DNA of 64,000 nt from positions 62,001 to 126,000 of the IMG/VR virus record IMGVR_UViG_3300030294_000005. The stretch is one strand, 5' to 3'. Positions within the stretch are counted from its first letter, which is position 1, and every line of letters begins with the position of its first letter. A program made the position numbers and the translations under genes. Shown piece after piece: positions 36,537 to 48,675 of the stretch. The notes under the pieces were generated by a model, which was not told the DNA's origin, did no database searches, and was given only the letters and a program-made list of their open reading frames with translations.

Positions 36537-39500
36537 ATGATATTTTTAGACGAATTGGATAATCTAAAATTATATAAAAAACAATTGTTTTTACCAATAA
36601 ACGAAAAAAATAAAAGAAAAGGTTCTGCCGTTTTTTTATTAACTCCAAATTATGAATCATCTAAAAAATTAATGAATAATGATAGTTTAGTTACCAGATG
36701 GTTTGAAAGTTATTATATAGAGAAGGATATATCATATTTTATAAATCAAGAAGGATATATTGTTCTTAATGATAATATTCCATATAATGTATTAAATGAA
36801 GAATTAAGAAATAGAATTGTTGTTACTAATACAAATAATATTATAAATGAAGCAGCAACAGATACTAAATTGGTTAAAGTTAAAGATCATCCATTATATG
36901 ATTATCTAAACTTTGATGAATATGATCCAGATGATATAATAGAGATTCCAATTTCTGATATAAAAGGAACTAATTTAGCTGAAGCTGATATACCTAATAC
37001 TTTAAAAGATCCAAAGAGTCTTCAAAGAGCATTGAAAATAAGGATGAGAAAACCTATAAATAGATTAAAGAGAATAGATCCTACTGACCCATCTAATACT
37101 GCAGCCCAAGTAGAAAAGATACAAGCATTAATGAATGAAAGTGCTTTAACTACAGAAGAGAAGAAAAAATTAAAAGATTCAGATTATGGATTATTAAAAA
37201 AGAAAAAATATCCTATGCCAGATAAGGAGCATGTACTATCAGCTATAAGATTTTTTAATTATGTAGATTCTGAGGATGAAAAAGAATTAGCTGATAATAT
37301 AAATAAAAAAATAAAAGAATATAAGATTGAAGATCAAGTTAATGTAGGAAAGAATAATAGATTTTCTAAATATTGCAATGAAGAATCTATAAAAGAATAT
37401 TTTAATTCTGAATCAACTCCTATTATATATGATTTACATTGTGCATTTTTAAAGTTCTTAGATGGACATTCTACAGAAGATGAAATGCTTTCAGATGTAG
37501 ATGTGAGATTTAAAGATAATAGTGAATTAATGAATGATGGATTAATAAATGACATTGATATATTTAATGACATTTCTGATTGTATATCATTTTATCTACC
37601 AAGATTAATTGATAAATGCAAATGCGATATAACTAAAATATTGAATAAATATTTATTCAATGATGATCTACAAGAATCATATATGGTAGGACATGTAGTC
37701 AAAGACTATTCAATTGACAAAATGGGACTAATGACAAAAGATTCTTTAATTATGTTTAATGAGAATATGGATGAAACAATAATGAATGAAGCAAATAAAG
37801 ATTACAATCCTGTTCTTTATAAGTTATTATATAATGAAAGATATAGAACTCCTAAAGAAGTAATAGCAATATATGATAATGTAAAGATAGATGCTCCTTA
37901 TATAACTAAAACATATTTAGATTATACTAAATATAGTAAACTCAATCTATTTGTAGATCTATCTTTCTATAACCAAACCTTCTTTAAAAATAATATATAT
38001 AAATTAGATAAGGGTATAGATTTATATTTTGAGTTTATAACAAGATTCTTAAAAGATTCTAGATTGGGAGCTGCGGGATATAATAAGAAAACTGTATTCA
38101 TTCCTGTTGATGACTGGACTAAACCTGATATGAAAAAAGTATATAACTATACTGAAGATATAAATCCGTTATCAATGATTTGTAGACTTATGGGGACTAC
38201 CAAATTATTAAATATACAACAAGAGTGGAAAGATATTGTATTAGTATTATTCTCTGCTCAAGGATATTTTAAAATAGATATCAATAGTTTAGTTGATAAA
38301 GATATAAGTCAAATACAAGTATTATTAAATAAACTAAAAAATAAAGATGTATCAATAGCAACTGATAATATAGATTCTCCTAAGGCTATAGTAGCTACTA
38401 TTGTAGATAAGATTGAAATTAGTCAAAATATAGAAATTAATAATTTGACTGGTAAAGCAGCAAAAGGAACTATATCTAATGGTGAGTTAGATGATAAGTT
38501 AAGTAATTCTGTTACATCTAAAACTGTTATTGATATTAATAAAAATGCACCTTCTGAAGATGTAGCACAGAATGATGATTTAAAAAATGAATTAGTTACT
38601 AAATTAAAAGATGCTTCTAAAGATGCTGCTTCAACTAATAATGTATTAGATGACATAAATAATGATGATGATATTAAAAAAATAATAGATACATTGTCAA
38701 CACAAGAAGATAATTCAGTAAAAATTAATGCAGCAAGATCAGCTAGAGTAACTAAATTGAACAATGATTTTTTAGACAGTAAGTTAAAAGAAACTACAGT
38801 AAAACAAATGATTGAACATGCTACCAATAATGAGCCTATCCCAAAAACTGAATTAAAAATAGATAGTGTGAATGAAGAGTGGAAAGACTTACGTTATATG
38901 AATTTTGAAAAAATATATAATCCAGCTGATGATATAGTAACTATGATAAATAGTTTTTCAGATAAAACAGCTCCAGTTATGGTACGAAATTTAAATATAG
39001 AAGACTCTTCTACTACAGAAGATTATAAAGATACCTGGACTGCTGAAATGGAAGATGTAAATGGAACTAGGTTTACATTAAAATTCGATATACCTAAATT
39101 TAAAGAAAATAAATTTATGTTATTAGGTGGTAATGAAAAAACAATAAATGGACAACTTGTATTATTACCTATAATAAAAACTGATGAAGATACTGTTCAG
39201 ATAGTTTCAAATTATAATAAAATATTTATAAGAAGATTTGGAACATCTAAAGGAAAATCTAATATAGTTGCTAATAGATTAATAAAAGCATTATCTAAAG
39301 AAAATCCCTTTAAAGTAGTTCCTGGAGATAATACAAAGATATGTTCTAAATATGAATTACCAATAGACTATATAGATTTAGCCTCACAATATTCTAAAAT
39401 AGAAACTAAGAAGCATATATTTTATTTTAATCAAGATGAAATAAGGGAGAAATATAAAGATACTATAGATCTTAAAAAAGGAATTCCAATATGTGTTGAA

Positions 39501-41780
39501 AAAGTTTCTAATAATATTATATATTTTAATGGTGATAATAATCAACAATTAGCAAATCTAATAAGATCTCAATTAATAATAGATGATTCATCATTTGAAG
39601 AAATATTTGAAAATACATCAATTGCTTCAAGATATACCTACTCAAAGGCTAGTATACTGAACACTGAGATTCCTCTAATACTCGTTATGGCATATAGTGA
39701 AGGTTTGCCTAAAGTGTTAAAGAAAGCCCATATAAATTACGAAATAATAGAAAAGAGACCAGCTTATGATAAGAATACCCAAGATATTATAAAATTTAAA
39801 GATGCATATATTTTATATACTTTAGATTATAATTCATCTTTATTGATGAATGGATTTAAAGAATGTGGAACTGAATTATATTCAATTTCAGAGATAACTA
39901 ATAAAACTATGTATTTAGATTTTCTTGATTTATTTGGCGGTAGATTAAGAGCAGATGGTCTTGATAACTTTCATGATTTAATGATAGATGTACCTATCAC
40001 AAAAGAAATATTAGAGTATTATAAACTACCAACTGATTATATAGAAGTTTTAGCTTATGCTAATTCACTGCTAGGAGATAATAAATATATAAGACATACT
40101 GATCAACGTGGTAGAAGGTATAGATCTAATGAAATAGTTGCTGGATATGCTTATCAAGCATTGGCTGATTCATATGGAGAATATAAAAGAAAGTTGAATC
40201 AATCAAGAAAAGCTACAATGGTTATAAAACAAAATGAAGTAATAAATAGAATCTTATTAGATCCAACAGCTTCTGATTTATCTACATTAAATCCAATACT
40301 AGAGCAAGAAGCTATGAATACTGTTAGTACAAAAGGACTAGTAGGAATGAACTCTGATAGAGGTTATAGTTTAGATAAAAGAACATTTGATAAATCAATG
40401 ATAAATGTATTAGGATTATCTACAGGGTTTGCTGGTAATGTTGGTATCTCAAGACAAGCAACAATAGATATGAATATAGAAGGTAAACGTGGATATATAA
40501 AAGTAACTGATGATCCAGCTGATTTAAATGTAACTAAATCTTTAACTATAACTGAAGCATTAACTCCATTCGGTACTAATATGGATGATCCATTTAGATC
40601 TGCAATGACATTTATACAAACATCTAAACATGGAATGAGAATAGCAAAAGGAATGCCTTCATTAATAACTAATGGAGCAGATGAAGCTTTGCCATTTATG
40701 GTTACTGATAAATTTGCATTTAAAGCTAAAGAAGATGGAAAAGTTATAGAGAGGTCAGATGATTATATGATAGTGCAATATAAATCTGGTGCTAAAGATT
40801 TTGTTGATTTAAGAAATAATATTAAAAAGAATTCTGATGGAGGTTTCTATATAACTTTAAAGCTAGACTCTGATTATAAAAAAGATAAAACATTTAAAAA
40901 AGATAATATACTTGCATATGATAAATTATCATTTTCAGATATGGTAGGTCATACAGATGATATTGGTTATAATTTAGGAGTATTGGTAAAAATAGCAATA
41001 TTAAATACTGATGAAGGTTATGAAGATAGTGCAATAATTTCAGAATATTTATCTGAAGCAATGGCATCTGAAGTTGTTGTAATGAAAGATATATCATTAC
41101 CAAAAAATACTAATATTTATAATATTGTAAAGAAAGGCGAACCAATTCAAGAAGGAGATCCATTAATAATATTTCAGAACTCTTTTGATGAAGAAGATGC
41201 CAATTTACTATTAAAGAATCTAGCTGGAGATGAAGAAGATATATCTGATCTTGGAAGAATTAGAGTTAAGTCTAAAATAACTGGAAATGTAGAGAATGTC
41301 AAAATCTATAGAACAGTTGAAAAAGAAGAGTTATCTGATTCTCTTAAGAAAACAGTAAATCAAATAGAAAAACCAACAAAGCAATTAAAAGATGTAATGA
41401 AAAAATATGATATAGATGAGTATAATAAACTGGACCCAGATTATAAACTTGATTCAACTGGAAAACTTAAAAATACAGATGATGGAATCCTGATAGAGTT
41501 CTATTTAAAATATAAAGATAAAATGTCTGTAGGAGATAAGTTAATATATTATTCAGCATTAAAAGGTGTTATAAAAGATATATTCCCACTTGGTAAAGAA
41601 CCATCATCTGAGTTTAGAAAAGATGAAAAAATTCATACACTCCTTGCATGTTCCTCAGTTAATGGTAGAATGGTGGGAAGTATATTATTATCTGCCCCTA
41701 TAAATAAAATAGTAATAGAATTAGATAGAGCAGTTAAAACTGAATTAGAAATACCATTTAAATATTTAGATGAGGAATAA
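36537..41780 (+). CDS. Phage multisubunit RNA polymerase beta-like subunit (probably virion RNAP) with long N-terminal extension
   Basis: DDPFRSAM..IQ..H (cf. RpoB DDANRALM..NMQRQ), GYEDSAIISE (GYNFEDS), GDKLIYYSALKGVI (GDKMAGRHGNKGV), SVNGRM (PSRM); late promoter and xxE/[SA] sites in the leader. Confidence 0.85.
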   Translation: MIFLDELDNLKLYKKQLFLPINEKNKRKGSAVFLLTPNYESSKKLMNNDSLVTRWFESYYIEKDISYFINQEGYIVLNDNIPYNVLNEELRNRIVVTNTNNIINEAATDTKLVKVKDHPLYDYLNFDEYDPDDIIEIPISDIKGTNLAEADIPNTLKDPKSLQRALKIRMRKPINRLKRIDPTDPSNTAAQVEKIQALMNESALTTEEKKKLKDSDYGLLKKKKYPMPDKEHVLSAIRFFNYVDSEDEKELADNINKKIKEYKIEDQVNVGKNNRFSKYCNEESIKEYFNSESTPIIYDLHCAFLKFLDGHSTEDEMLSDVDVRFKDNSELMNDGLINDIDIFNDISDCISFYLPRLIDKCKCDITKILNKYLFNDDLQESYMVGHVVKDYSIDKMGLMTKDSLIMFNENMDETIMNEANKDYNPVLYKLLYNERYRTPKEVIAIYDNVKIDAPYITKTYLDYTKYSKLNLFVDLSFYNQTFFKNNIYKLDKGIDLYFEFITRFLKDSRLGAAGYNKKTVFIPVDDWTKPDMKKVYNYTEDINPLSMICRLMGTTKLLNIQQEWKDIVLVLFSAQGYFKIDINSLVDKDISQIQVLLNKLKNKDVSIATDNIDSPKAIVATIVDKIEISQNIEINNLTGKAAKGTISNGELDDKLSNSVTSKTVIDINKNAPSEDVAQNDDLKNELVTKLKDASKDAASTNNVLDDINNDDDIKKIIDTLSTQEDNSVKINAARSARVTKLNNDFLDSKLKETTVKQMIEHATNNEPIPKTELKIDSVNEEWKDLRYMNFEKIYNPADDIVTMINSFSDKTAPVMVRNLNIEDSSTTEDYKDTWTAEMEDVNGTRFTLKFDIPKFKENKFMLLGGNEKTINGQLVLLPIIKTDEDTVQIVSNYNKIFIRRFGTSKGKSNIVANRLIKALSKENPFKVVPGDNTKICSKYELPIDYIDLASQYSKIETKKHIFYFNQDEIREKYKDTIDLKKGIPICVEKVSNNIIYFNGDNNQQLANLIRSQLIIDDSSFEEIFENTSIASRYTYSKASILNTEIPLILVMAYSEGLPKVLKKAHINYEIIEKRPAYDKNTQDIIKFKDAYILYTLDYNSSLLMNGFKECGTELYSISEITNKTMYLDFLDLFGGRLRADGLDNFHDLMIDVPITKEILEYYKLPTDYIEVLAYANSLLGDNKYIRHTDQRGRRYRSNEIVAGYAYQALADSYGEYKRKLNQSRKATMVIKQNEVINRILLDPTASDLSTLNPILEQEAMNTVSTKGLVGMNSDRGYSLDKRTFDKSMINVLGLSTGFAGNVGISRQATIDMNIEGKRGYIKVTDDPADLNVTKSLTITEALTPFGTNMDDPFRSAMTFIQTSKHGMRIAKGMPSLITNGADEALPFMVTDKFAFKAKEDGKVIERSDDYMIVQYKSGAKDFVDLRNNIKKNSDGGFYITLKLDSDYKKDKTFKKDNILAYDKLSFSDMVGHTDDIGYNLGVLVKIAILNTDEGYEDSAIISEYLSEAMASEVVVMKDISLPKNTNIYNIVKKGEPIQEGDPLIIFQNSFDEEDANLLLKNLAGDEEDISDLGRIRVKSKITGNVENVKIYRTVEKEELSDSLKKTVNQIEKPTKQLKDVMKKYDIDEYNKLDPDYKLDSTGKLKNTDDGILIEFYLKYKDKMSVGDKLIYYSALKGVIKDIFPLGKEPSSEFRKDEKIHTLLACSSVNGRMVGSILLSAPINKIVIELDRAVKTELEIPFKYLDEE

Positions 41781-44384: not shown

Positions 44385-44696
44385 TTAATTACAAGTTGGT
44401 AATAATTCACCTTTATAATCTATTAGACCAAATTGATTATTTAATTTTCCTACTGCTATTCCATCTTTAAAATTATCAATATGATCATATTCACATGGTA
44501 TTATTTCTTTTCCAGTTCTATCAATAGCCCCATTTTTACCATTAAGAGTTACTATTGCTATACTCTCACTAAAATCATCTATATAATCATATTTTAATGG
44601 AACTATTTCATTACCCTCTTTATCAATTAATCCATACTTATTATCTGTTTGTACTATTGCTACCTTTCCTGAAAACTTTCTAATTTGATCATACAT
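44385..44696 (-). CDS. WG (KWG Leptospira-type) repeat protein
   Basis: Repeats of KYGLIDK.G.EIVP.KYD.I..F.E..A.V; early motif at 44733-44742. Confidence 0.85.
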   Translation of the reverse strand: MYDQIRKFSGKVAIVQTDNKYGLIDKEGNEIVPLKYDYIDDFSESIAIVTLNGKNGAIDRTGKEIIPCEYDHIDNFKDGIAVGKLNNQFGLIDYKGELLPTCN

Positions 44697-44759
44697 TATA
44701 TAACCCCCTATAATAATTTTATATTCATTATTATAATATATAATTGTAAATATTTATAC

Positions 44760-45986
44760 TTACTTATCTTTATTTTCTATTACTTCATCTACAGGTTCTC
44801 CTATAACTTCATCTATATTATATTCTTCTTTCTCATAAGTACGTTTATATTCAGGAGTTAATGTGTCATACATAGACTTACCTAAAACTAAATTTATAAT
44901 AGGTTCTACTGTTTCTTGTATTTCCATAGCTAATATTCTTATTTCAGCTTGAGCATGAATATCTGTTCTCAATGCTAGGAATGCTATTAATGATTTAAAT
45001 GTAAATGTCATATATAATGACGTTTGGGCATTGTTTGGTAAGTATGCTCTAGCATCTTCTGGTATTAATCTATTTTCACCTAATGATTTATCATTTAATT
45101 GATTATAGATTTTCATAAGTTCATCGCCTAATTCTTGTAATGTTAACTCACTTGTTGAACCATTAAATCCTATATTATATTTATAATTTACATCATATTT
45201 ATCTTTATATTTATCAGGGGAATTGAATCCAAACTTTTCCGCACAATAATCTACATATCTTTGTGATAGTTGGGTTATTCCATTTCTATGTCTATCTACT
45301 TGTTGAGATATAATTCTTGATATATCTTTAAATAATATAGTGATAGAGCAGAAGTCTAATAAATCTTCTAATGAAAATATCTTATTAGTTTCATTATAGA
45401 TATACATGATATCATCCATGTTTACAATAGAGACGTTGGCACTTAATACTTTATTATTAAAAACAGCTGGATAAGTACAATCTAAATCTATAAATTTAGA
45501 TTCTGACATTATTTCATCTTCTATAAAATCATTTAAATATTCCTTATTAATATTATAGAGATTATTTAATATGATTTTTGCAATAGAATTATCTTGATTA
45601 TCTATATTTCTAAAGATATGTTTATATCCTCTTATAGAACCTCCAATAAGAAAATGTATTTCTTTTCCTATATATTTTATTTTTATATTTAAATATTTAC
45701 ATAGAGTTTCTATTTCTGCTAACTCTATTAGATTTTCTATGTCTAATTGTAATATAAGATATATTACTATATTAGAATGCTCTAGAATTGATTCATGCCC
45801 AGTTGCTACTCTTCTTTTTATATAATCTAATTTAGCTTGTATTCCTACCTCTCCATCTTTGTCATAGCATATTTTACATGCATCATGTATGATATCAATA
45901 TGATTATTAGAATATATGAATTTATCATATACTCCTTTGGTAAATAGTTTATGTTTTTTAATTAGTGATGATAATAATTTCTTCAT
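44760..45986 (-). CDS. thyX: FAD-dependent thymidylate synthase (extended, tandem-type)
   Basis: GHESILEH, ISR.ISQQ.DRHR....QLSQRYV, EDARAYLPN and LR...HAQAEIR.LA; late-type promoter at 46016-46027. Confidence 0.9.
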   Translation of the reverse strand: MKKLLSSLIKKHKLFTKGVYDKFIYSNNHIDIIHDACKICYDKDGEVGIQAKLDYIKRRVATGHESILEHSNIVIYLILQLDIENLIELAEIETLCKYLNIKIKYIGKEIHFLIGGSIRGYKHIFRNIDNQDNSIAKIILNNLYNINKEYLNDFIEDEIMSESKFIDLDCTYPAVFNNKVLSANVSIVNMDDIMYIYNETNKIFSLEDLLDFCSITILFKDISRIISQQVDRHRNGITQLSQRYVDYCAEKFGFNSPDKYKDKYDVNYKYNIGFNGSTSELTLQELGDELMKIYNQLNDKSLGENRLIPEDARAYLPNNAQTSLYMTFTFKSLIAFLALRTDIHAQAEIRILAMEIQETVEPIINLVLGKSMYDTLTPEYKRTYEKEEYNIDEVIGEPVDEVIENKDK

Positions 45987-46289
45987 ATTAATTAATCCCC
46001 TTCCCTTTATATATTTATTAATCTGTTATAATTTATATATATTAATAATATACTCTAAGGATTTTGAATTTTATCAGAATTTAAATACCCTACTATGTCT
46101 TGTTTATAATATCAATATCTTATAATTAATATTTATAATTTTATTATTATAATATTTAATCATAATTTAAATTTTATAGTTATAGTTGATTAATTTTTTA
46201 TTTAAAAAAAATATAATTAAAATAATTATTTTGATGTTATGTATGAAATTTTTTTTAATTTAGAAAAAATAATATAGTAGGAAACCCTA

Positions 46290-46748
46290 CTATATTGTAC
46301 TATATTCTTCATGAAATATTTTATAACTATAATGCTTAATAATATTTAACTTATTATTTAGTGATAAATCTTCAAAATTATTTAATTTGCAACAATTTAC
46401 ACATTTAATAATATTATCTTTTTTATCAAGTGTATGATGACCACCAGATTCACATTCACAATATTTATATAATAACATCTTAACCATATCATTTACATTC
46501 TTCTGTTGTGCAAATTCATTTGTCTTTGTATTCAGAAATCTATATGTATTACTATTACATCTATCACCATAATATTTTTCACTCTCATGTACTATAATAT
46601 ATGCTATTCCTTTATCATTATAGTATAATTTAACATTTCCTATATCCTTAGATGTGGGAGTGATTAGATTTAATCTCTTTTTCATTATATCAAAATTTTC
46701 TATCTCGTCTCCATCAATCTCTTGGAATATTCCTATTATCTTATTCAT
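46290..46748 (-). CDS. Hypothetical early protein with Cys cluster (CECE...CVNC)
   Basis: AGGAG RBS, early motif at 46791-46800, terminator at 46272-46295. Confidence 0.6.
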   Translation of the reverse strand: MNKIIGIFQEIDGDEIENFDIMKKRLNLITPTSKDIGNVKLYYNDKGIAYIIVHESEKYYGDRCNSNTYRFLNTKTNEFAQQKNVNDMVKMLLYKYCECESGGHHTLDKKDNIIKCVNCCKLNNFEDLSLNNKLNIIKHYSYKIFHEEYSTI

Positions 46749-46834
46749 CTTAATATCTCCTTTTTAATTATATTAATTTTATTCATTGTTATAATATATA
46801 ATTAAAATTAATAAGATATGCAAATGACAAAATC

Positions 46835-46918
46835 CCGCCAGTGGAAATCAATCCACTGGCGAGTATGCAATAAAGGAAAACATAAAGAGTAGAAGAACAA
46901 AGCGTTTAAATTATAGTT
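46835..46918 (-). ncRNA. Candidate small RNA (AACT-N6-TA promoter, about 75 nt, GC-rich hairpin)
   Basis: Promoter-like motif at 46907-46918, no ORF, ends at CGCCAGTGGA-loop-TCCACTGGCG plus a T-tract. Confidence 0.35.
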
Positions 46919-46921
46919 ATA

Positions 46922-47036
46922 AAAATATATAATGATTCCTTTCAGAATCATTATATATATGATAAAATTTTAGGAGAGCTTTAAAAAAATGAAATATTAA
47001 TTACTATGGATAATTAAAAAGATTTACTATATAGTT
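46922..47036 (-). ncRNA. Candidate small RNA containing anti-SD CUCUCCU
   Basis: AACT-N6-TA at 47025-47036, no ORF, ends at hairpin 46925-46959 plus TTTTT. Confidence 0.3.
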
Positions 47037-47745
47037 AATTAAAATAATTATTTAATATGGTTAATATATTAGAAAATATAGTATCTTTATCAAATATATT
47101 TGATACTATAGTACCAGCCATATCATGGGATTCATAACATTTAACTATGTTCCATGATAATTTATTACATACATACTCATGATTAGCATCTAACTCTAAT
47201 TGATATTTTTTATTAGATTCATGTAAATCATTAATTATACCATCCTTAGAATCTCTATTATATAAATTTTTAAAATTCAATTCTACTGGGATATACATAA
47301 ATAATACAATATCTTCTTTATGAAGTTGATTCTTTCCATATTCTAAATCTATACACCAATCTATAAACTTATCTTTTTCTTCACTGATATTATATCTTGT
47401 AGATTGATACATTATATTAGATCCTACATAACGATCCATTATAATAGTATATCCATCTTTTAATAATTTATCAATATTTATCTTATCATTATATCTATTC
47501 AGAGCATAGAATAATGATATAGTATGTGGATCAATATCATATAATTTACCATAATCTCCTTTTAAATATTTTTTTACAAATATTGAAGAATTATTGTTAT
47601 AAGTTGGATATGATATTAATATAGTTTTACTATTCCAATGATTTCTAATATATTCAGTTAGTAGTTTAGCATTGGTTTCTTTAAAGCATCCATCTAATCC
47701 TTCAAGAGTTATCATTTTTCCTTTAATATTTTCTCTAGTTATCAT
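47035..47745 (-). CDS. tmk: Thymidylate (dTMP) kinase
   Basis: ITLEGLDGCFKET P-loop, LFYALNR, IIMDRYVGSN.MYQ and D.HES. Confidence 0.85.
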   Translation of the reverse strand: MITRENIKGKMITLEGLDGCFKETNAKLLTEYIRNHWNSKTILISYPTYNNNSSIFVKKYLKGDYGKLYDIDPHTISLFYALNRYNDKINIDKLLKDGYTIIMDRYVGSNIMYQSTRYNISEEKDKFIDWCIDLEYGKNQLHKEDIVLFMYIPVELNFKNLYNRDSKDGIINDLHESNKKYQLELDANHEYVCNKLSWNIVKCYESHDMAGTIVSNIFDKDTIFSNILTILNNYFN

Positions 47746-47788
47746 TTTATAAACTCCTCTACATTAATATATTAATATATATTTTAAG

Positions 47789-47798
47789 TATATATTAT
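47789..47798 (+). promoter_or_regulatory. Putative early promoter TATATATTAT
   Basis: Located at the strand switch, upstream of the plus-strand early block. Confidence 0.55.
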
Positions 47799-47837
47799 AT
47801 GTATGTAAGAATAATAATAAATTTATAAAATGAAAGG

Positions 47838-48263
47838 ATGATTAAAATGCTACAACTAAGTGATAGGGATACAAAAATTTCAAAAAGACTTCTTAATGGA
47901 GAAAACAAAAATGAATTAGCAAAGGAGTATCATATATCAATATCTACAATTAATCATATATATAGAATGTATAATTATAGAGTAGAAATATGCAGTGGAG
48001 TTATTGGAAAAGATAAGAATCAAACCTCTATACTTATATATATATTAAAATATGATAAAGCATCTTTTAAAACTTTAGATAGAGAAAGATATTCTACTAT
48101 AGAACTTGTAGTAAAATTATTTAATACGGATAAGATTGAGAAGATTATTAATATAAGAAACATGGGTGTAAAAACTATGAAATATATTGCCGATTGTTTG
48201 AAAGAGGATAATTACACTATAAGTAAAGTAGTACAGGATTATATAGACGAAAGGATGATTTAA
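47838..48263 (+). CDS. Sigma-region-4-like HTH fused to RNAP alpha-CTD-like domain, copy 1
   Basis: LSDRD..I....LNG....ELAKEY.IS.STI (HTH) plus TL.RERYSTIE.....IINIRNMGVKTM..I.DCL (alpha-CTD HhH; cf. RNLGRKS). Confidence 0.6.
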   Translation: MIKMLQLSDRDTKISKRLLNGENKNELAKEYHISISTINHIYRMYNYRVEICSGVIGKDKNQTSILIYILKYDKASFKTLDRERYSTIELVVKLFNTDKIEKIINIRNMGVKTMKYIADCLKEDNYTISKVVQDYIDERMI

Positions 48264-48267
48264 TATG
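48218..48267 (+). repeat. 50-bp direct repeat copy 1 (gene end + RBS + ATG)
   Basis: Identical to 48630-48679. Confidence 0.9.
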
Positions 48268-48675
48268 TTATATTTAAGTGATAGAGATATTGAGATATCA
48301 AAAAGGATTATAGATGGAGAATCTATAAGTAAATTAACAAAAGAATATAATATACCAAAAAGCACTATTAGAAGATTATATAATATGTATAATTATAGAG
48401 TATATATATATGATAAAGCTATTAAAAAAGAAGATATGCCATTGATTATATATACTTTAAAATTTGACATGAGATGTTTTAGTGTATTAAATAGAAATAA
48501 ATATTATACTATAGATTCTGTAGTAGAATTATTTAATACAGATAGGATTGAGGAGATTACTAATATGAGAAATATGGGTATAAGAAATATAAAATTCATA
48601 GTTGATTGCTTAAAAAATAATAATTATGGTATAAGTAAAGTAGTACAGGATTATATAGACGAAAGGATGATTTAA
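48265..48675 (+). CDS. Sigma-region-4-like HTH fused to alpha-CTD-like domain, copy 2
   Basis: Tandem paralog of 47838..48263; RCFSVLNRNKYYTID...ITNMRNMGIRN. Confidence 0.6.
   Translation: MLYLSDRDIEISKRIIDGESISKLTKEYNIPKSTIRRLYNMYNYRVYIYDKAIKKEDMPLIIYTLKFDMRCFSVLNRNKYYTIDSVVELFNTDRIEEITNMRNMGIRNIKFIVDCLKNNNYGISKVVQDYIDERMI

What the first reader, a model, noticed from the sequence alone, without database searches (positions are those of the whole stretch)
44760..47745. AR9-type promoters coexist with a dTMP pathway (ThyX + Tmk): thymine-DNA version of a uracil-reading system?
Known: AR9/PBS1 DNA contains dU instead of T, and AR9 nvRNAP requires template-strand uracils opposite the promoter AA. 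Seen: this phage has the same consensus yet encodes an intact-looking ThyX (itself behind such a promoter) and a dTMP kinase. Inference: the nvRNAP may read thymine here, the genome may be partially substituted, or the extended 408-aa ThyX may make a different dU derivative.
Basis: partly seen in the sequence, partly recalled or inferred. Interest (0 to 1): 0.65.

Follow-up and report, generated by a model that had tools for sequence, protein, structure and literature searches.

The report
Thymine-making relative of uracil-DNA phage AR9
This uncultured 236-kb peat phage has the transcription machinery and both promoter types of the uracil-DNA phage AR9, yet it encodes enzymes that make thymidylate and none that make uracil-DNA, so its polymerase most likely reads the same promoter written with thymine.

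Summary
ThyX (44760-45986, -) and a thymidylate-kinase-family gene (47035-47745, -) are real. AACA-N6-TA, the AR9 late-promoter consensus, lies 41 nt upstream of ThyX. It is the most enriched of all 4mer-N6-2mer words upstream of the genome's genes (68 genes against about 10 expected), the same level as in AR9.

The phage is a distant AR9 relative. It has all four nvRNAP core subunits and a gp226 homologue (model against 7S01_A, Z 26.8). The AR9-type early motif is also present.

No known part of the dU-DNA toolkit was found: Dcd, NT5C/HD/Ham1-type dT-nucleotide hydrolases, Ugi.

Gene content separates the two groups:
- Of 37 large genomes of this clade, 26 carry ThyX and 9 carry ThyA, never both.
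- The four isolates shown or indicated to have dU-DNA (AR9, S6, phiR1-37, LPJP1) all carry Dcd and no thymidylate synthase.
- The gp226 helix that excludes thymine in AR9 (V206, aromatic 210) is conserved in those four and not in this clade (Pro and Lys here).

Best reading: thymine DNA, with a gp226-type polymerase reading 3'-TTGT-5'. This is inferred, not shown. No RNA data or DNA chemistry were available. The kinase has an atypical Walker A loop.

The parts
44760..45986 (-). Long (408 aa) flavin-dependent thymidylate synthase ThyX. The C-lobe (residues 176-377) is a full ThyX protomer fold. The N-lobe (about residues 20-175) carries the GHESILEH motif.
   Evidence: Pfam Thy1 2.2e-30. Alignment with M. 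tuberculosis ThyX 2AF6/3GWC shows the motifs RHR, SQRY, ARAxLPN and LRxxxHAQxEIR. H64, S66, E69, H70, R224, R232, H233, S241, R243, Y244, R313 and R340 are invariant in 67 homologues. Model pLDDT 90.8. T. maritima ThyX 1O28_A: Z 13.0, rmsd 3.0, 178 residues aligned on model 176-376.
46016..46027 (-). AR9 late-type (nvRNAP) promoter motif AACA-GATTAA-TA in front of ThyX. The predicted transcription start is the A at 46016.
   Evidence: Read from the sequence. It lies 41 nt from the ATG, within the 27-60 nt peak of the genome-wide distribution. The motif is the top-ranked word upstream of genes. The start site is inferred from the AR9 consensus (PMC5312081).
46271..46296 (-). Intrinsic terminator hairpin after orf152, upstream of the ThyX promoter.
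   Evidence: 11-pair stem followed by a T run. Three terminator-like sites were found in the region against 0.3 expected.
46290..46748 (-). orf152, a Cys-rich protein of unknown function lying between Tmk and ThyX.
   Evidence: No Pfam or PHROG match.
46784..46803 (-). AR9 early-type (virion RNAP) promoter motif AATTATATATTAT-AACAAT-G in front of orf152.
   Evidence: AR9 early consensus AAATATATATTAT-(6N)-G from PMC5312081.
46834..46863 (-). Strong intrinsic terminator after the Tmk-family gene.
   Evidence: 12 pairs, 8 of them G-C.
47035..47745 (-). Thymidylate-kinase-family protein of eukaryote-like type I, with an atypical Walker A loop (EGLDGCFKETN).
   Evidence: PF02223 9e-17. Best solved relatives are P. 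falciparum and human TMPK, 2e-13. The DRY motif and the F...NRY dTMP-site residues are kept. F in place of G and E in place of S/T in the P-loop are conserved in all clade homologues. The gene lies next to ThyX in many relatives.
47765..47784 (-). Degenerate early-like motif AAATATATATTAA-TATATT-A in front of the Tmk-family gene.
   Evidence: Read. It matches 12 of 13 positions of the AR9 early consensus and lacks the +1 G. This is a weak assignment.
44726..44745 (-). AR9 early-type promoter motif in front of the WG-repeat gene (44385-44696) downstream of ThyX.
36537..41780 (+). Virion RNAP beta-like subunit as one fused 1747-aa ORF. In AR9 the equivalent (g189) is interrupted by introns.
   Evidence: PF00562 hit. 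Blastp to AR9 g189 pieces. tblastn to PBS1, AR9, LPJP1, S6 and phiR1-37. It has its own AACA-N6-T motif 48 nt upstream.

Best explanation
The window belongs to a 236-kb jumbo phage from peat. It is a member of a large uncultured sister group of the AR9/PBS1-type phages.

The phage keeps the AR9 two-polymerase programme. A virion RNAP starts at AATTATATATTAT-N6-G early promoters. A non-virion RNAP, made of four split beta/beta' subunits plus a gp226-type sigma-like subunit, starts at AACA-N6-TA late promoters.

Unlike AR9, it builds ordinary thymine DNA. ThyX methylates dUMP to dTMP, and the neighbouring TMPK-family protein probably phosphorylates dTMP. The phage has none of the enzymes that dU-DNA phages use to make dUTP, destroy dT nucleotides or block uracil-DNA glycosylase.

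Its non-virion polymerase must therefore recognise the -10-like element as 3'-TTGT-5' in the template strand. It would do so through a remodelled gp226 '2.1bis' helix, in which the thymine-excluding valine and the guanine-stacking aromatic of AR9 are replaced by Pro220 and Lys here.

Shown: the genes, the motifs and their positional enrichment, the fold homologies and the gene-content dichotomy.
Inferred: thymine in the DNA, thymine reading by the polymerase, transcription start sites, and the activity of both enzymes.
For: 1. Kinship and machinery.
- 66 ORFs are shared with AR9, largely in the same order. They include homologues of nvRNAP g089, g105, g154 and g270 and of vRNAP g145, g189 and g264.
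- The model of gp226 exon 1 matches AR9 gp226 7S01_A at Z 26.8, rmsd 2.5 A over 260 residues. The next match scores Z 4.4.
- The clade profile hits gp226 of AR9 (1e-27), phiR1-37 (4e-34), S6 (9e-22) and LPJP1 (2.5e-20).

2. Promoters.
- AACA-N6-TA is the top upstream word in G000 (z about 15.7).
- It is also top in relatives G001 (ThyX+, 73 of 211 genes) and G002 (ThyA+, 51 of 198), equal to AR9 (55 of 215).
- It precedes capsid, portal, sheath, terminase and tape-measure genes.
- The early motif occurs 7 times in the window against 0.13 expected.
- Sigma-70-like sites are not enriched.

3. dU toolkit absent from G000 (95% complete).
- No dCMP_cyt_deam_1/Dcd, NT5C, Ham1, HD or MazG.
- No Ugi or AR9 g151/g221 by tblastn.
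- No dUTPase or UDG either.
- The toolkit is defined in PMC12697855.

4. Gene-content dichotomy.
- Clade: ThyX in 26 of 37 genomes and ThyA in 9 of 37, mutually exclusive. A Dcd-family domain occurs in only 3.
- dU isolates AR9, S6, phiR1-37 and LPJP1: Dcd present, ThyX absent, ThyA absent. dU evidence for LPJP1 is in PMC8460666.

5. ThyX looks active. The catalytic and FAD/dUMP-site residues are invariant and the fold is ThyX. Tmk-ThyX adjacency is conserved in relatives.

6. gp226 2.1bis helix.
- dU isolates read D-x-V-I-W-x-[YF]-L.
- The clade reads [NH]-x-x-[LI]-W-x-[KM]-Q.
- The V206 position holds P, T, V, I, L, K or G.
- In AR9, V206 blocks thymine and V206G accepts it (PMC9209446).
Against: - There is no direct evidence on DNA chemistry or on transcription. 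No RNA run holds this phage.
- AR9 nvRNAP is inactive on T at -11 and -10. Exclusion at -11 comes from the DNA backbone conformation, not from one side chain (PMC9209446), so a thymine-reading enzyme needs more than one substitution.
- Pro still has a C-beta, so the residue change does not by itself predict acceptance of thymine.
- Several ThyX+ relatives keep Val at that position. There is therefore no clean residue-to-genotype rule.
- The Tmk-family protein has F for the Walker A glycine and E for the S/T, so its kinase activity is uncertain.
- The RHR-to-S spacing in ThyX is one residue shorter than canonical.
- dUTPase is absent, which would also suit a dU phage.
- ThyX homologues in relatives are mostly not preceded by the AACA motif.
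Confidence: 0.7

Rival explanations
1. The virion DNA is fully dU-substituted, as in AR9, and the polymerase still needs uracil. ThyX and the kinase-family protein would then do something else. For example, the atypical kinase could act as a dUMP kinase feeding dUTP, and ThyX could be inactive or could serve the host pool early in infection.
For: - Its nearest cultured relatives by vRNAP beta (PBS1/AR9, LPJP1, S6-type, phiR1-37) are known or indicated dU phages; the more distant JD-Fnp phages are of unknown status.
- The late consensus is identical to AR9's.
- No dUTPase is encoded.
- The kinase has a non-canonical P-loop.
- G+C is low, 25.9%, as in dU phages (PMC8460666).
Against: - No Dcd, Dtm/Dtt-type hydrolase or Ugi was found. 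All three biochemically characterised dU pathways need a Dcd plus a dT-nucleotide hydrolase (PMC12697855).
- All four dU isolates tested lack any thymidylate synthase.
- The ThyX active-site residues are invariant across a family of more than 400 members.
- ThyX and ThyA alternate across the clade.
- The uracil-specific Val-Ile-Trp-x-aromatic signature is lost.
Confidence: 0.1
2. The DNA carries a partly substituted or differently modified pyrimidine. The two-lobed long ThyX would make a C5 derivative other than a methyl group, or thymine would be modified further. The atypical kinase would be adapted to that nucleotide, and the polymerase would read the modified base.
For: - ThyX has an extra lobe of about 150 residues and an RHR-S loop one residue shorter than canonical.
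- The kinase has a P-loop that is unusual but conserved across the clade.
- An unknown Cys-rich ORF sits between the two genes.
Against: - Every characterised ThyX-family enzyme matched, including PolB, is a C5 methylase.
- Nine sister genomes carry ThyA instead, at canonical scores of up to 301 bits. This argues that the selected function is plain dTMP synthesis.
- No hydroxymethylase-type or hypermodification genes were noticed, although these were not searched for exhaustively.
Confidence: 0.12
3. AACA-N6-TA is not a promoter in this phage. It would be a by-product of A+T-rich intergenic composition, or a signal for something else, and late genes would be transcribed from other signals.
For: - Counted over the whole window, the extended form of the motif (TAACA-N6-TAA) is not above chance: 14 against 12 expected.
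- There is no transcript evidence.
- The motif is weak in relative G011 and in part of G012.
Against: - It ranks first of 4096 x 3 gapped words in position- and strand-specific enrichment.
- It sits 27-60 nt before start codons in the sense orientation only, 91 against 26 antisense.
- The statistics equal those of AR9, where the motif has been mapped to transcription start sites (PMC5312081).
- The cognate sigma-like subunit is conserved.
Confidence: 0.05

Closest known systems
Bacillus phage AR9 / PBS1 non-virion RNAP with gp226 and its late promoters (PDB 7S01, 7UM0; PMC5449584, PMC9209446, PMC5312081)
   Same: - Four split beta/beta' core subunits plus a gp226-fold sigma-like subunit (Z 26.8).
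- Late consensus AACA-N6-TA at the same distance from genes and with the same frequency.
- Early consensus A/T-rich 13-mer-N6-G.
- Gene order around gp226 (GroEL, g227, g226, primase).
- Beta-N R363, gp226 I207 and W208 are conserved.
   Different: - Sequence identity is only 20-43%.
- V206 is replaced by Pro, Y210 by Lys, and beta-N K375 by Ser in the alignment.
- The genome encodes ThyX and a TMPK-family protein, and lacks Dcd, Dtm and Ugi.
- The vRNAP beta subunit is fused into a single ORF.
- AR9 needs template-strand dU at -11 and -10. Here those bases are most likely dT.
AR9 gp226 V206G mutant (engineered enzyme that accepts T at -10; PMC9209446)
   Same: A change at the same residue of the 2.1bis helix, associated with reading thymine in the same promoter.
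   Different: - The mutant is a laboratory single substitution that relaxes only the -10 position.
- Here the change is natural, the position is hypervariable across a clade, it comes with loss of the aromatic at 210, and no function has been tested.
dU-DNA biosynthesis modules of PBS1, DSS3_VP1 and phiR1-37 (Dcd plus Dtm or Dtt; PMC12697855)
   Same: The phage lineage and genome architecture of PBS1 and phiR1-37.
   Different: None of the module's enzyme families is detectable here. A dTMP-synthesis module stands in its place.
Canonical ThyX (T. maritima TM0449, M. tuberculosis Rv2754c, PBCV-1 A674R)
   Same: The fold and all flavin- and dUMP-site motifs.
   Different: - The protein is about 190 residues longer and has two lobes.
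- The GHxSxxEH motif sits in the extra N-lobe, and the rest sits in the C-lobe.
- RHR(X)6S replaces RHR(X)7S.
phiKZ nvRNAP with gp68
   Same: A jumbo-phage non-virion RNAP with a sigma-like fifth subunit that works on thymine DNA.
   Different: The promoter is different (TATG). The phage belongs to a different lineage and forms a nucleus. gp68 was not retrieved by any search here.

Membership tests
AR9-type non-virion RNAP / gp226 promoter system | Sigma-like fifth subunit homologous to AR9 gp226 | tested here: met
   - Blastp gives 24% identity, E 1.4e-5.
- The model against 7S01_A gives Z 26.8, rmsd 2.5, 260 residues aligned.
- The clade profile against AR9 gp226 gives 1e-27.
- Synteny with GroEL, g227 and primase.
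- The gene is split by an insert of about 585 nt.
AR9-type non-virion RNAP / gp226 promoter system | Four split beta/beta' core subunits (g089, g105, g154, g270) | tested here: met
   E-values of 1e-95, 8e-44, 3e-44 and 4e-36 respectively.
AR9-type non-virion RNAP / gp226 promoter system | Late promoter consensus AACA-N6-TA/G upstream of late genes | tested here: met
   It is the top-ranked word, present at 68 of 276 genes against 10 expected. It precedes the structural genes and ThyX.
AR9-type non-virion RNAP / gp226 promoter system | Transcripts start at the A/G of the TA element | not testable with these tools
   No RNA run holds the phage.
AR9-type non-virion RNAP / gp226 promoter system | Strict need for template-strand deoxyuridine at -11/-10, with Val206 conserved | tested here: not met
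   The residue part was tested. V-I-W-x-[YF] is conserved in AR9, phiR1-37, S6 and LPJP1. It reads P-I-W-N-K here and is hypervariable in the clade. The biochemical need for dU itself cannot be tested here.
dU-DNA phages (PBS1/AR9, S6, phiR1-37, LPJP1) | dCTP deaminase (Dcd) of the dCMP_cyt_deam_1 family | tested here: not met
   Absent in G000. Present in all four dU isolates.
dU-DNA phages (PBS1/AR9, S6, phiR1-37, LPJP1) | dTMP phosphatase or dTTP pyrophosphatase (NT5C-like, HD or Ham1-type) | tested here: not met
   no match at E <= 0.1.
dU-DNA phages (PBS1/AR9, S6, phiR1-37, LPJP1) | Uracil-DNA glycosylase inhibitor | tested here: inconclusive
   tblastn with AR9 Ugi found no homologue. 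UDG inhibitors are small, diverse in fold and easily missed.
dU-DNA phages (PBS1/AR9, S6, phiR1-37, LPJP1) | No thymidylate synthase encoded | tested here: not met
   G000 has ThyX. The four dU isolates have neither ThyX nor ThyA.
dU-DNA phages (PBS1/AR9, S6, phiR1-37, LPJP1) | dU replaces dT in virion DNA | not testable with these tools
   Short-read assemblies do not distinguish U from T.
Flavin-dependent thymidylate synthase ThyX | Thy1 domain above the Pfam cut-off, and a ThyX fold | tested here: met
   106 bits against a cut-off of 24.8. Z 13 to 1O28_A.
Flavin-dependent thymidylate synthase ThyX | ThyX motif RHR(X)7S plus the dUMP/FAD-site Arg and His residues | tested here: inconclusive
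   RHR, SQRY, R313, R340 and H64/H70 are present and invariant. The spacing is RHR(X)6S throughout this family.
Flavin-dependent thymidylate synthase ThyX | dUMP to dTMP activity | not testable with these tools
   Needs thyA complementation or an enzyme assay.
Thymidylate kinase (TMPK) | Thymidylate_kin domain, DR[YHF] motif and dTMP-site residues | tested here: met
   PF02223 62 bits. Alignment to PfTMPK 2WWF shows F...NRY and DRY conserved.
Thymidylate kinase (TMPK) | Walker A loop GxxxxGK[ST] | tested here: not met
   The loop reads G-L-D-G-C-F-K-E-T. The F and E are conserved in nearly all clade homologues examined; one relative keeps the glycine.

The most novel reading that the evidence does not exclude
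The DNA is not plain thymine DNA. The two-lobed long ThyX and the kinase with the conserved aberrant P-loop would form a pathway to a so far undescribed C5-modified (or only partly thymine-substituted) deoxyuridine. The clade's gp226-type polymerase would have co-evolved to read that base at AACA promoters.

A milder novel reading has a probability of about 0.6. In it, these phages are natural thymine-reading versions of the AR9 template-strand promoter system. Uracil dependence would then have been gained or lost by remodelling one helix. Relative G011 (Dcd present, no thymidylate synthase, nested inside the thymidylate-synthase-encoding clade) would mark an independent switch.
Probability: 0.1. 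Interest if true: 0.85.

Novelty: new variant of a known kind. Interest (0 to 1): 0.62.

Why it matters
AR9's non-virion RNAP is the only polymerase known to recognise its -10-like element in the template strand and to require deoxyuridine there. That requirement has been read as the way the phage tells its own DNA from the host's.

In 2022 only twelve gp226 homologues were known, all from proven or presumed dU phages (PMC9209446). This finding points to a large environmental clade with the following features:
- More than 400 gp226 clusters, on many complete genomes of 200-290 kb.
- The same subunit fold; the three genomes examined in full, including this one, share AR9's promoter consensus.
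- Genes for thymidylate synthesis instead of dU synthesis.

If these phages have thymine DNA, three things follow:
- Uracil dependence is not intrinsic to the mechanism.
- Nature supplies dozens of variants of the discriminating helix for structure-function work.
- It becomes an open and testable question how such a phage avoids transcribing host DNA from so short a consensus.

The gene-content rule (Dcd without a thymidylate synthase, against a thymidylate synthase without Dcd) is also a practical predictor of dU-DNA in metagenomic jumbo phages.

Tried and rejected
- RNA evidence for start sites. The look-up of sequencing runs found only peat DNA assemblies and no RNA run. Read laying was therefore not used, because contigs cannot show starts or base chemistry.
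- Correlating the residue at the V206 position with ThyX, ThyA or Dcd status in 36 relatives. There is no clean rule, and Val occurs in several ThyX+ genomes.
- Asking whether ThyX homologues in 20 relatives sit behind the AACA motif. Mostly they do not, and many follow Tmk directly. 'ThyX behind a late promoter' is a feature of this genome, not of the clade.
- Internal duplication of ThyX tested by hhalign of the N half against the C half. There is no signal, probability 0.1%. The two-lobe description rests on the model and on Pfam hits only.
- Rfam search of the insert in the gp226 gene for a group I intron. There was no hit at E <= 1. The intron call rests on exon colinearity and on the U / G boundary bases.
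- Host sigma-70-type promoters are not enriched: 42 against 44.8 expected.
- The polarity of the T/U switch. The vRNAP-beta tree leaves the deep nodes open, and the outgroup and JD-Fnp1 branches are long. No direction is claimed.
- The CTCT-N7-TT enrichment turned out to be terminator hairpins.
- Predicting the complex of the gp226 homologue with beta-N was considered and not run, because it could not distinguish U from T.


Full report
**What is in the window.**

The window is bases 62001-126000 of a 236,184-bp IMG/VR virus record. The record has 25.9% G+C, is 95% complete by CheckV, and its ends overlap. Near-identical sequence occurs in at least ten peat metagenome samples. No RNA run holds it.

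On the minus strand of the flagged region lie, in order of transcription:
- A thymidylate-kinase-family ORF (47035-47745, 236 aa, PF02223 9e-17).
- A strong terminator (46863-46834).
- An early-type promoter motif (46803-46784).
- orf152 (46290-46748, no family match).
- A terminator (46296-46271).
- The motif AACA-GATTAA-TA (46027-46016).
- ThyX (44760-45986, 408 aa, PF02511 2.2e-30).
- Another early-type motif (44745-44726).
- A WG-repeat gene.

**What kind of phage it is.**

All AR9 ORFs were compared with all ORFs of the genome. 66 pairs are shared at 20-43% identity, largely in the same order (AR9 record fetched). They include:
- The four non-virion RNAP core subunits g089, g105, g154 and g270.
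- Virion RNAP subunits. One is a fused 1747-aa beta-like ORF at window 36537-41780.
- GroEL, primase, both DNA polymerase pieces, gyrase, UvsX, terminase, portal, sheath and capsid.

The closest cultured phages by vRNAP beta are PBS1/AR9, Listeria LPJP1, the Staphylococcus S6 group, Yersinia phiR1-37 and the Fusobacterium JD-Fnp phages, all at about 27-34% identity.

**The promoter-specificity subunit.**

The AR9 gp226 homologue lies outside the window, at genome 23681-25757. It is weak by BLAST (24% identity, E 1.4e-5). It sits in the AR9 gene order GroEL-g227-g226-...-primase.

A model was built from exon 1 with 104 homologues (pLDDT 88.4). It superposes on AR9 gp226 chain A of 7S01 at Z 26.8, rmsd 2.5 A over 260 residues. 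The next unrelated match scores Z 4.4.

A profile of the clade's homologues finds gp226 of AR9 (1e-27), phiR1-37 (4e-34), S6 (9e-22) and LPJP1 (2.5e-20). It finds nothing in JD-Fnp1.

The gene is interrupted by about 585 nt.
- Exon 1 ends at ...YLTKAD.
- The downstream frame opens with ESLYLQNKVNCQETM....
- The two are colinear with an unsplit 494-aa homologue of 87% identity.
- The 5' exon ends in T and the insert ends in G, as in group I introns.
- Rfam finds no family for the insert.

**The promoter motifs.**

There are two classes, and both match AR9.

*Early type.* AATTATATATTAT-N6-G, usually followed by AATAAA, matches the AR9 early (virion RNAP) consensus AAATATATATTAT-(6N)-G of PMC5312081. 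About 35 copies occur genome-wide. The window holds 7 against 0.13 expected.

*Late type.* AACA-N6-TA matches the AR9 late consensus AACA-(6N)-TA/G.
- Its raw count over the window is not above chance: 14 against 12 expected for TAACA-N6-TAA.
- Its position and strand are strongly non-random. In the 120 nt upstream of 276 genes there are 91 sense copies and 26 antisense copies. Permuted cores give 28-46.
- The copies peak 27-60 nt before start codons.
- Among all 4mer-N6-2mer words in the -75 to -16 interval it ranks first. It is present at 68 genes against 10.3 +/- 3.2 expected, z about 15.7.
- The same script ranks it first in AR9 (55 of 215 genes), in relative G001 (ThyX+, 73 of 211) and in relative G002 (ThyA+, 51 of 198).
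- The clade consensus is slightly extended, to AACAT-N5-TAA.
- It precedes capsid, portal, sheath, terminase and tape-measure genes, and ThyX.

Sigma-70-like sites are not enriched.

The conspicuous long repeat near these genes is the early type. Only ThyX has the uracil-relevant late type. The kinase gene has no more than a degenerate early-like motif.

**Is the DNA uracil or thymine? Gene content.**

Three dU pathways have been dissected biochemically. Each uses a Dcd (dCTP deaminase of the dCMP_cyt_deam_1 family) plus a dT-nucleotide hydrolase. The hydrolase is an NT5C-like Dtm in PBS1, an HD Dtm in DSS3_VP1 and a Ham1-type Dtt in phiR1-37 (PMC12697855).

Six-frame HMM searches of the whole genome find none of the following:
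- PF00383.
- NT5C.
- Ham1, HD or MazG.
- dUTPase or UDG.

tblastn with AR9 Ugi, g221 (Dcd) and g151 (Dtm) finds nothing below E = 0.4.

The gp226 alignment was then used to fetch 80 loci from IMG/VR, and the 36 contigs of 200-290 kb were searched.

| Group | ThyX | ThyA | Dcd-family domain |
|---|---|---|---|
| Clade, 37 genomes including this one | 26 | 9 (all ThyX-negative, scores up to 301 bits) | 3 (G007 with ThyA, G032 with ThyX, G011 alone) |
| AR9, S6, phiR1-37, LPJP1 | none | none | all four |
| JD-Fnp1 | none | none | none |

Only G011 and G024 have neither synthase. The clade data are and the isolate data. A TMPK-family gene is found in 18 of the 38 records searched, often next to ThyX.

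LPJP1 native DNA blocks Q5 polymerase but not Q5U (PMC8460666).

Two analogous synthases are mutually exclusive in 35 of 37 genomes. That is the signature of selection for dTMP synthesis itself, and it is hard to reconcile with a genome that excludes thymine.

**ThyX.**

The alignment with M. tuberculosis ThyX shows these motifs:
- GHESILEH.
- ISR.
- RHR-NGITQL-SQRY, which is RHR(X)6S, one residue shorter than the canonical RHR(X)7S.
- ARAYLPN.
- LRTDIHAQAEIR.

In 67 family members H64, S66, E69, H70, R224, R232, H233, Q239, S241, R243, Y244, R313 and R340 are invariant. The family has more than 400 clusters, many on jumbo-sized contigs.

The AlphaFold model has pLDDT 90.8 and two lobes. Residues 176-377 superpose on the whole T. 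maritima protomer (Z 13.0, rmsd 3.0, 178 residues). Residues about 20-175 begin with a genuine ThyX N-terminal segment that carries GHESILEH (Pfam profile positions 5-75, up to 29 bits in relatives).

I read this as a ThyX with a partial internal duplication or a large insertion, with the active-site motifs shared between the lobes. That reading is an inference, because hhalign between the halves gives no signal.

All structural neighbours, PolB included, are C5 methylases. The extra length is therefore a clade feature of an apparently functional enzyme, not a sign of decay.

**The kinase.**

Its best solved relatives are the eukaryote-type TMPKs of P. falciparum and human (2e-13 and 2e-10). 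The thymine-stacking Phe, the NRY arginine and the DRY motif are kept.

The Walker A loop reads EGLDGCFKETN where PfTMPK has EGLDRSGKSTQ. Phe stands in place of the glycine before the lysine, and Glu in place of Ser/Thr. This FKET loop is conserved in nearly all clade homologues examined; one relative has AGKET.

The protein is a member of the TMPK fold family, and its synteny with ThyX argues for a role in the same pathway. Kinase activity and substrate (dTMP or dUMP) are not established. This is the weakest link of the 'intact dTMP pathway'.

**The uracil-discriminating pocket.**

In AR9 the -10 uracil lies between gp226 I207 and beta-N R363. Its C5 is 3.9 A from V206, V206G accepts T, and Y210 stacks on -9G. 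The valine is 'absolutely conserved' in dU phages (PMC9209446).

The alignment here confirms this for the dU isolates:
- AR9: DVVIWTYL.
- phiR1-37: DQVIWRYL.
- S6: DRVIWRFL.
- LPJP1: DKVIWYFL.

The peat clade reads [NH]-x-x-[LI]-W-x-[KM]-Q-x-IR.
- The V206 position holds P, T, V, I, L, K, G, A, R or M.
- No aromatic stands at 210.
- This phage reads N-P-I-W-N-K-Q, with Pro220 at the start of a short helix in the model.

Beta-N R363 is conserved. K375 aligns with Ser.

The helix that imposes uracil specificity has therefore diverged at exactly the discriminating residues, while the Ile/Leu-Trp core is kept.

This does not prove that thymine is accepted:
- Pro keeps a C-beta.
- Exclusion at -11 in AR9 depends on the DNA conformation.
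- Some ThyX+ relatives keep Val.

**Phylogeny.**

A tree was built on 945 residues of vRNAP beta.
- G000, G001, G011 and G002 form a clade (100/100).
- LPJP1, S6 and AR9 form another (95/98).
- Deeper nodes are unresolved. The RSL2 outgroup and JD-Fnp1 sit on long branches.
- No direction of the T/U change is claimed.
- G011 (Dcd present, no synthase) is nested inside the synthase-encoding clade (92/96).

**Conclusion.**

The best-supported explanation, at about 0.7, is that these are thymine-DNA relatives of AR9. Their gp226-type polymerase would read the AACA-N6-TA promoter with thymines in the template strand.

The rivals each stand at about 0.1 or below:
- Full dU-DNA despite ThyX.
- A modified or partly substituted pyrimidine.
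- The motif is not a promoter.

Among the papers searched, none describes a thymidylate-synthase-encoding lineage with gp226 and the AACA consensus. I rate it a new variant of a known kind.

Noticed in passing
outside the window: G000 genome 24611-25196 (locus L010 about 1912-2497): The gp226-homologue gene is interrupted by about 585 nt that contain no ORF. The exons are colinear with an unsplit homologue of 87% identity. The 5' exon ends in T and the insert ends in G, which suggests a group I intron, but Rfam finds none. At least ten other clade members have the same split (proteins of about 310 aa).
   Followed up: partly
47035-47745 (-): The TMPK-family protein has a Walker A loop in which F replaces the conserved glycine and E replaces S/T (GLDGCFKET). 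This is conserved in nearly all clade homologues examined, and the dTMP-site residues are kept. It may be a kinase with an unusual phosphate loop or a protein with a changed function.
   Followed up: partly
relative G011 (IMGVR_UViG_3300029305_004606, 200,990 bp; loci L123-L132, L161): This clade member has a Dcd-family gene (430-aa ORF at 86036-86371), no ThyX or ThyA, V-I-W in the gp226 helix and only a weak AACA signal. It is nested inside the synthase-encoding clade in the vRNAP tree. It may be an independent switch towards dU-DNA.
   Followed up: partly
G000 genome 9595, 37001, 48072, 138710, 198141 (all outside the window): Five early-type promoters are followed by a conserved leader, AATAAAAGTTAGTAGT...AAACTACTAA. 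Its ends are complementary, so it may form a 5'-UTR stem.
   Followed up: no
36537-41780 (+): The virion RNAP beta-like subunit is a single uninterrupted 1747-aa ORF. It covers what AR9 encodes as the intron-rich g189, plus about 400 extra N-terminal residues.
   Followed up: no
47838-48263 and 48265-48675 (+): Two tandem paralogous small HTH proteins (weak GerE/LuxR-like match) end in the same ...ISKVVQDYIDERMI tail. The first is behind an early-type promoter at 47786-47805.
   Followed up: no
relative G002 (223,708 bp) 185502-188610: In this ThyA-carrying relative, a weak homologue of AR9 g151 (the NT5C-like dTMP phosphatase; 29% identity, E 1e-6) lies 2 kb from ThyA. This is an odd pairing if both act on dTMP.
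   Followed up: no
Fusobacterium phage JD-Fnp1 (ON464759.1): This cultured 180-kb relative, related by vRNAP beta, has no Dcd, ThyX, ThyA or detectable gp226 homologue. Its branch is long and its promoter system was not examined.
   Followed up: no
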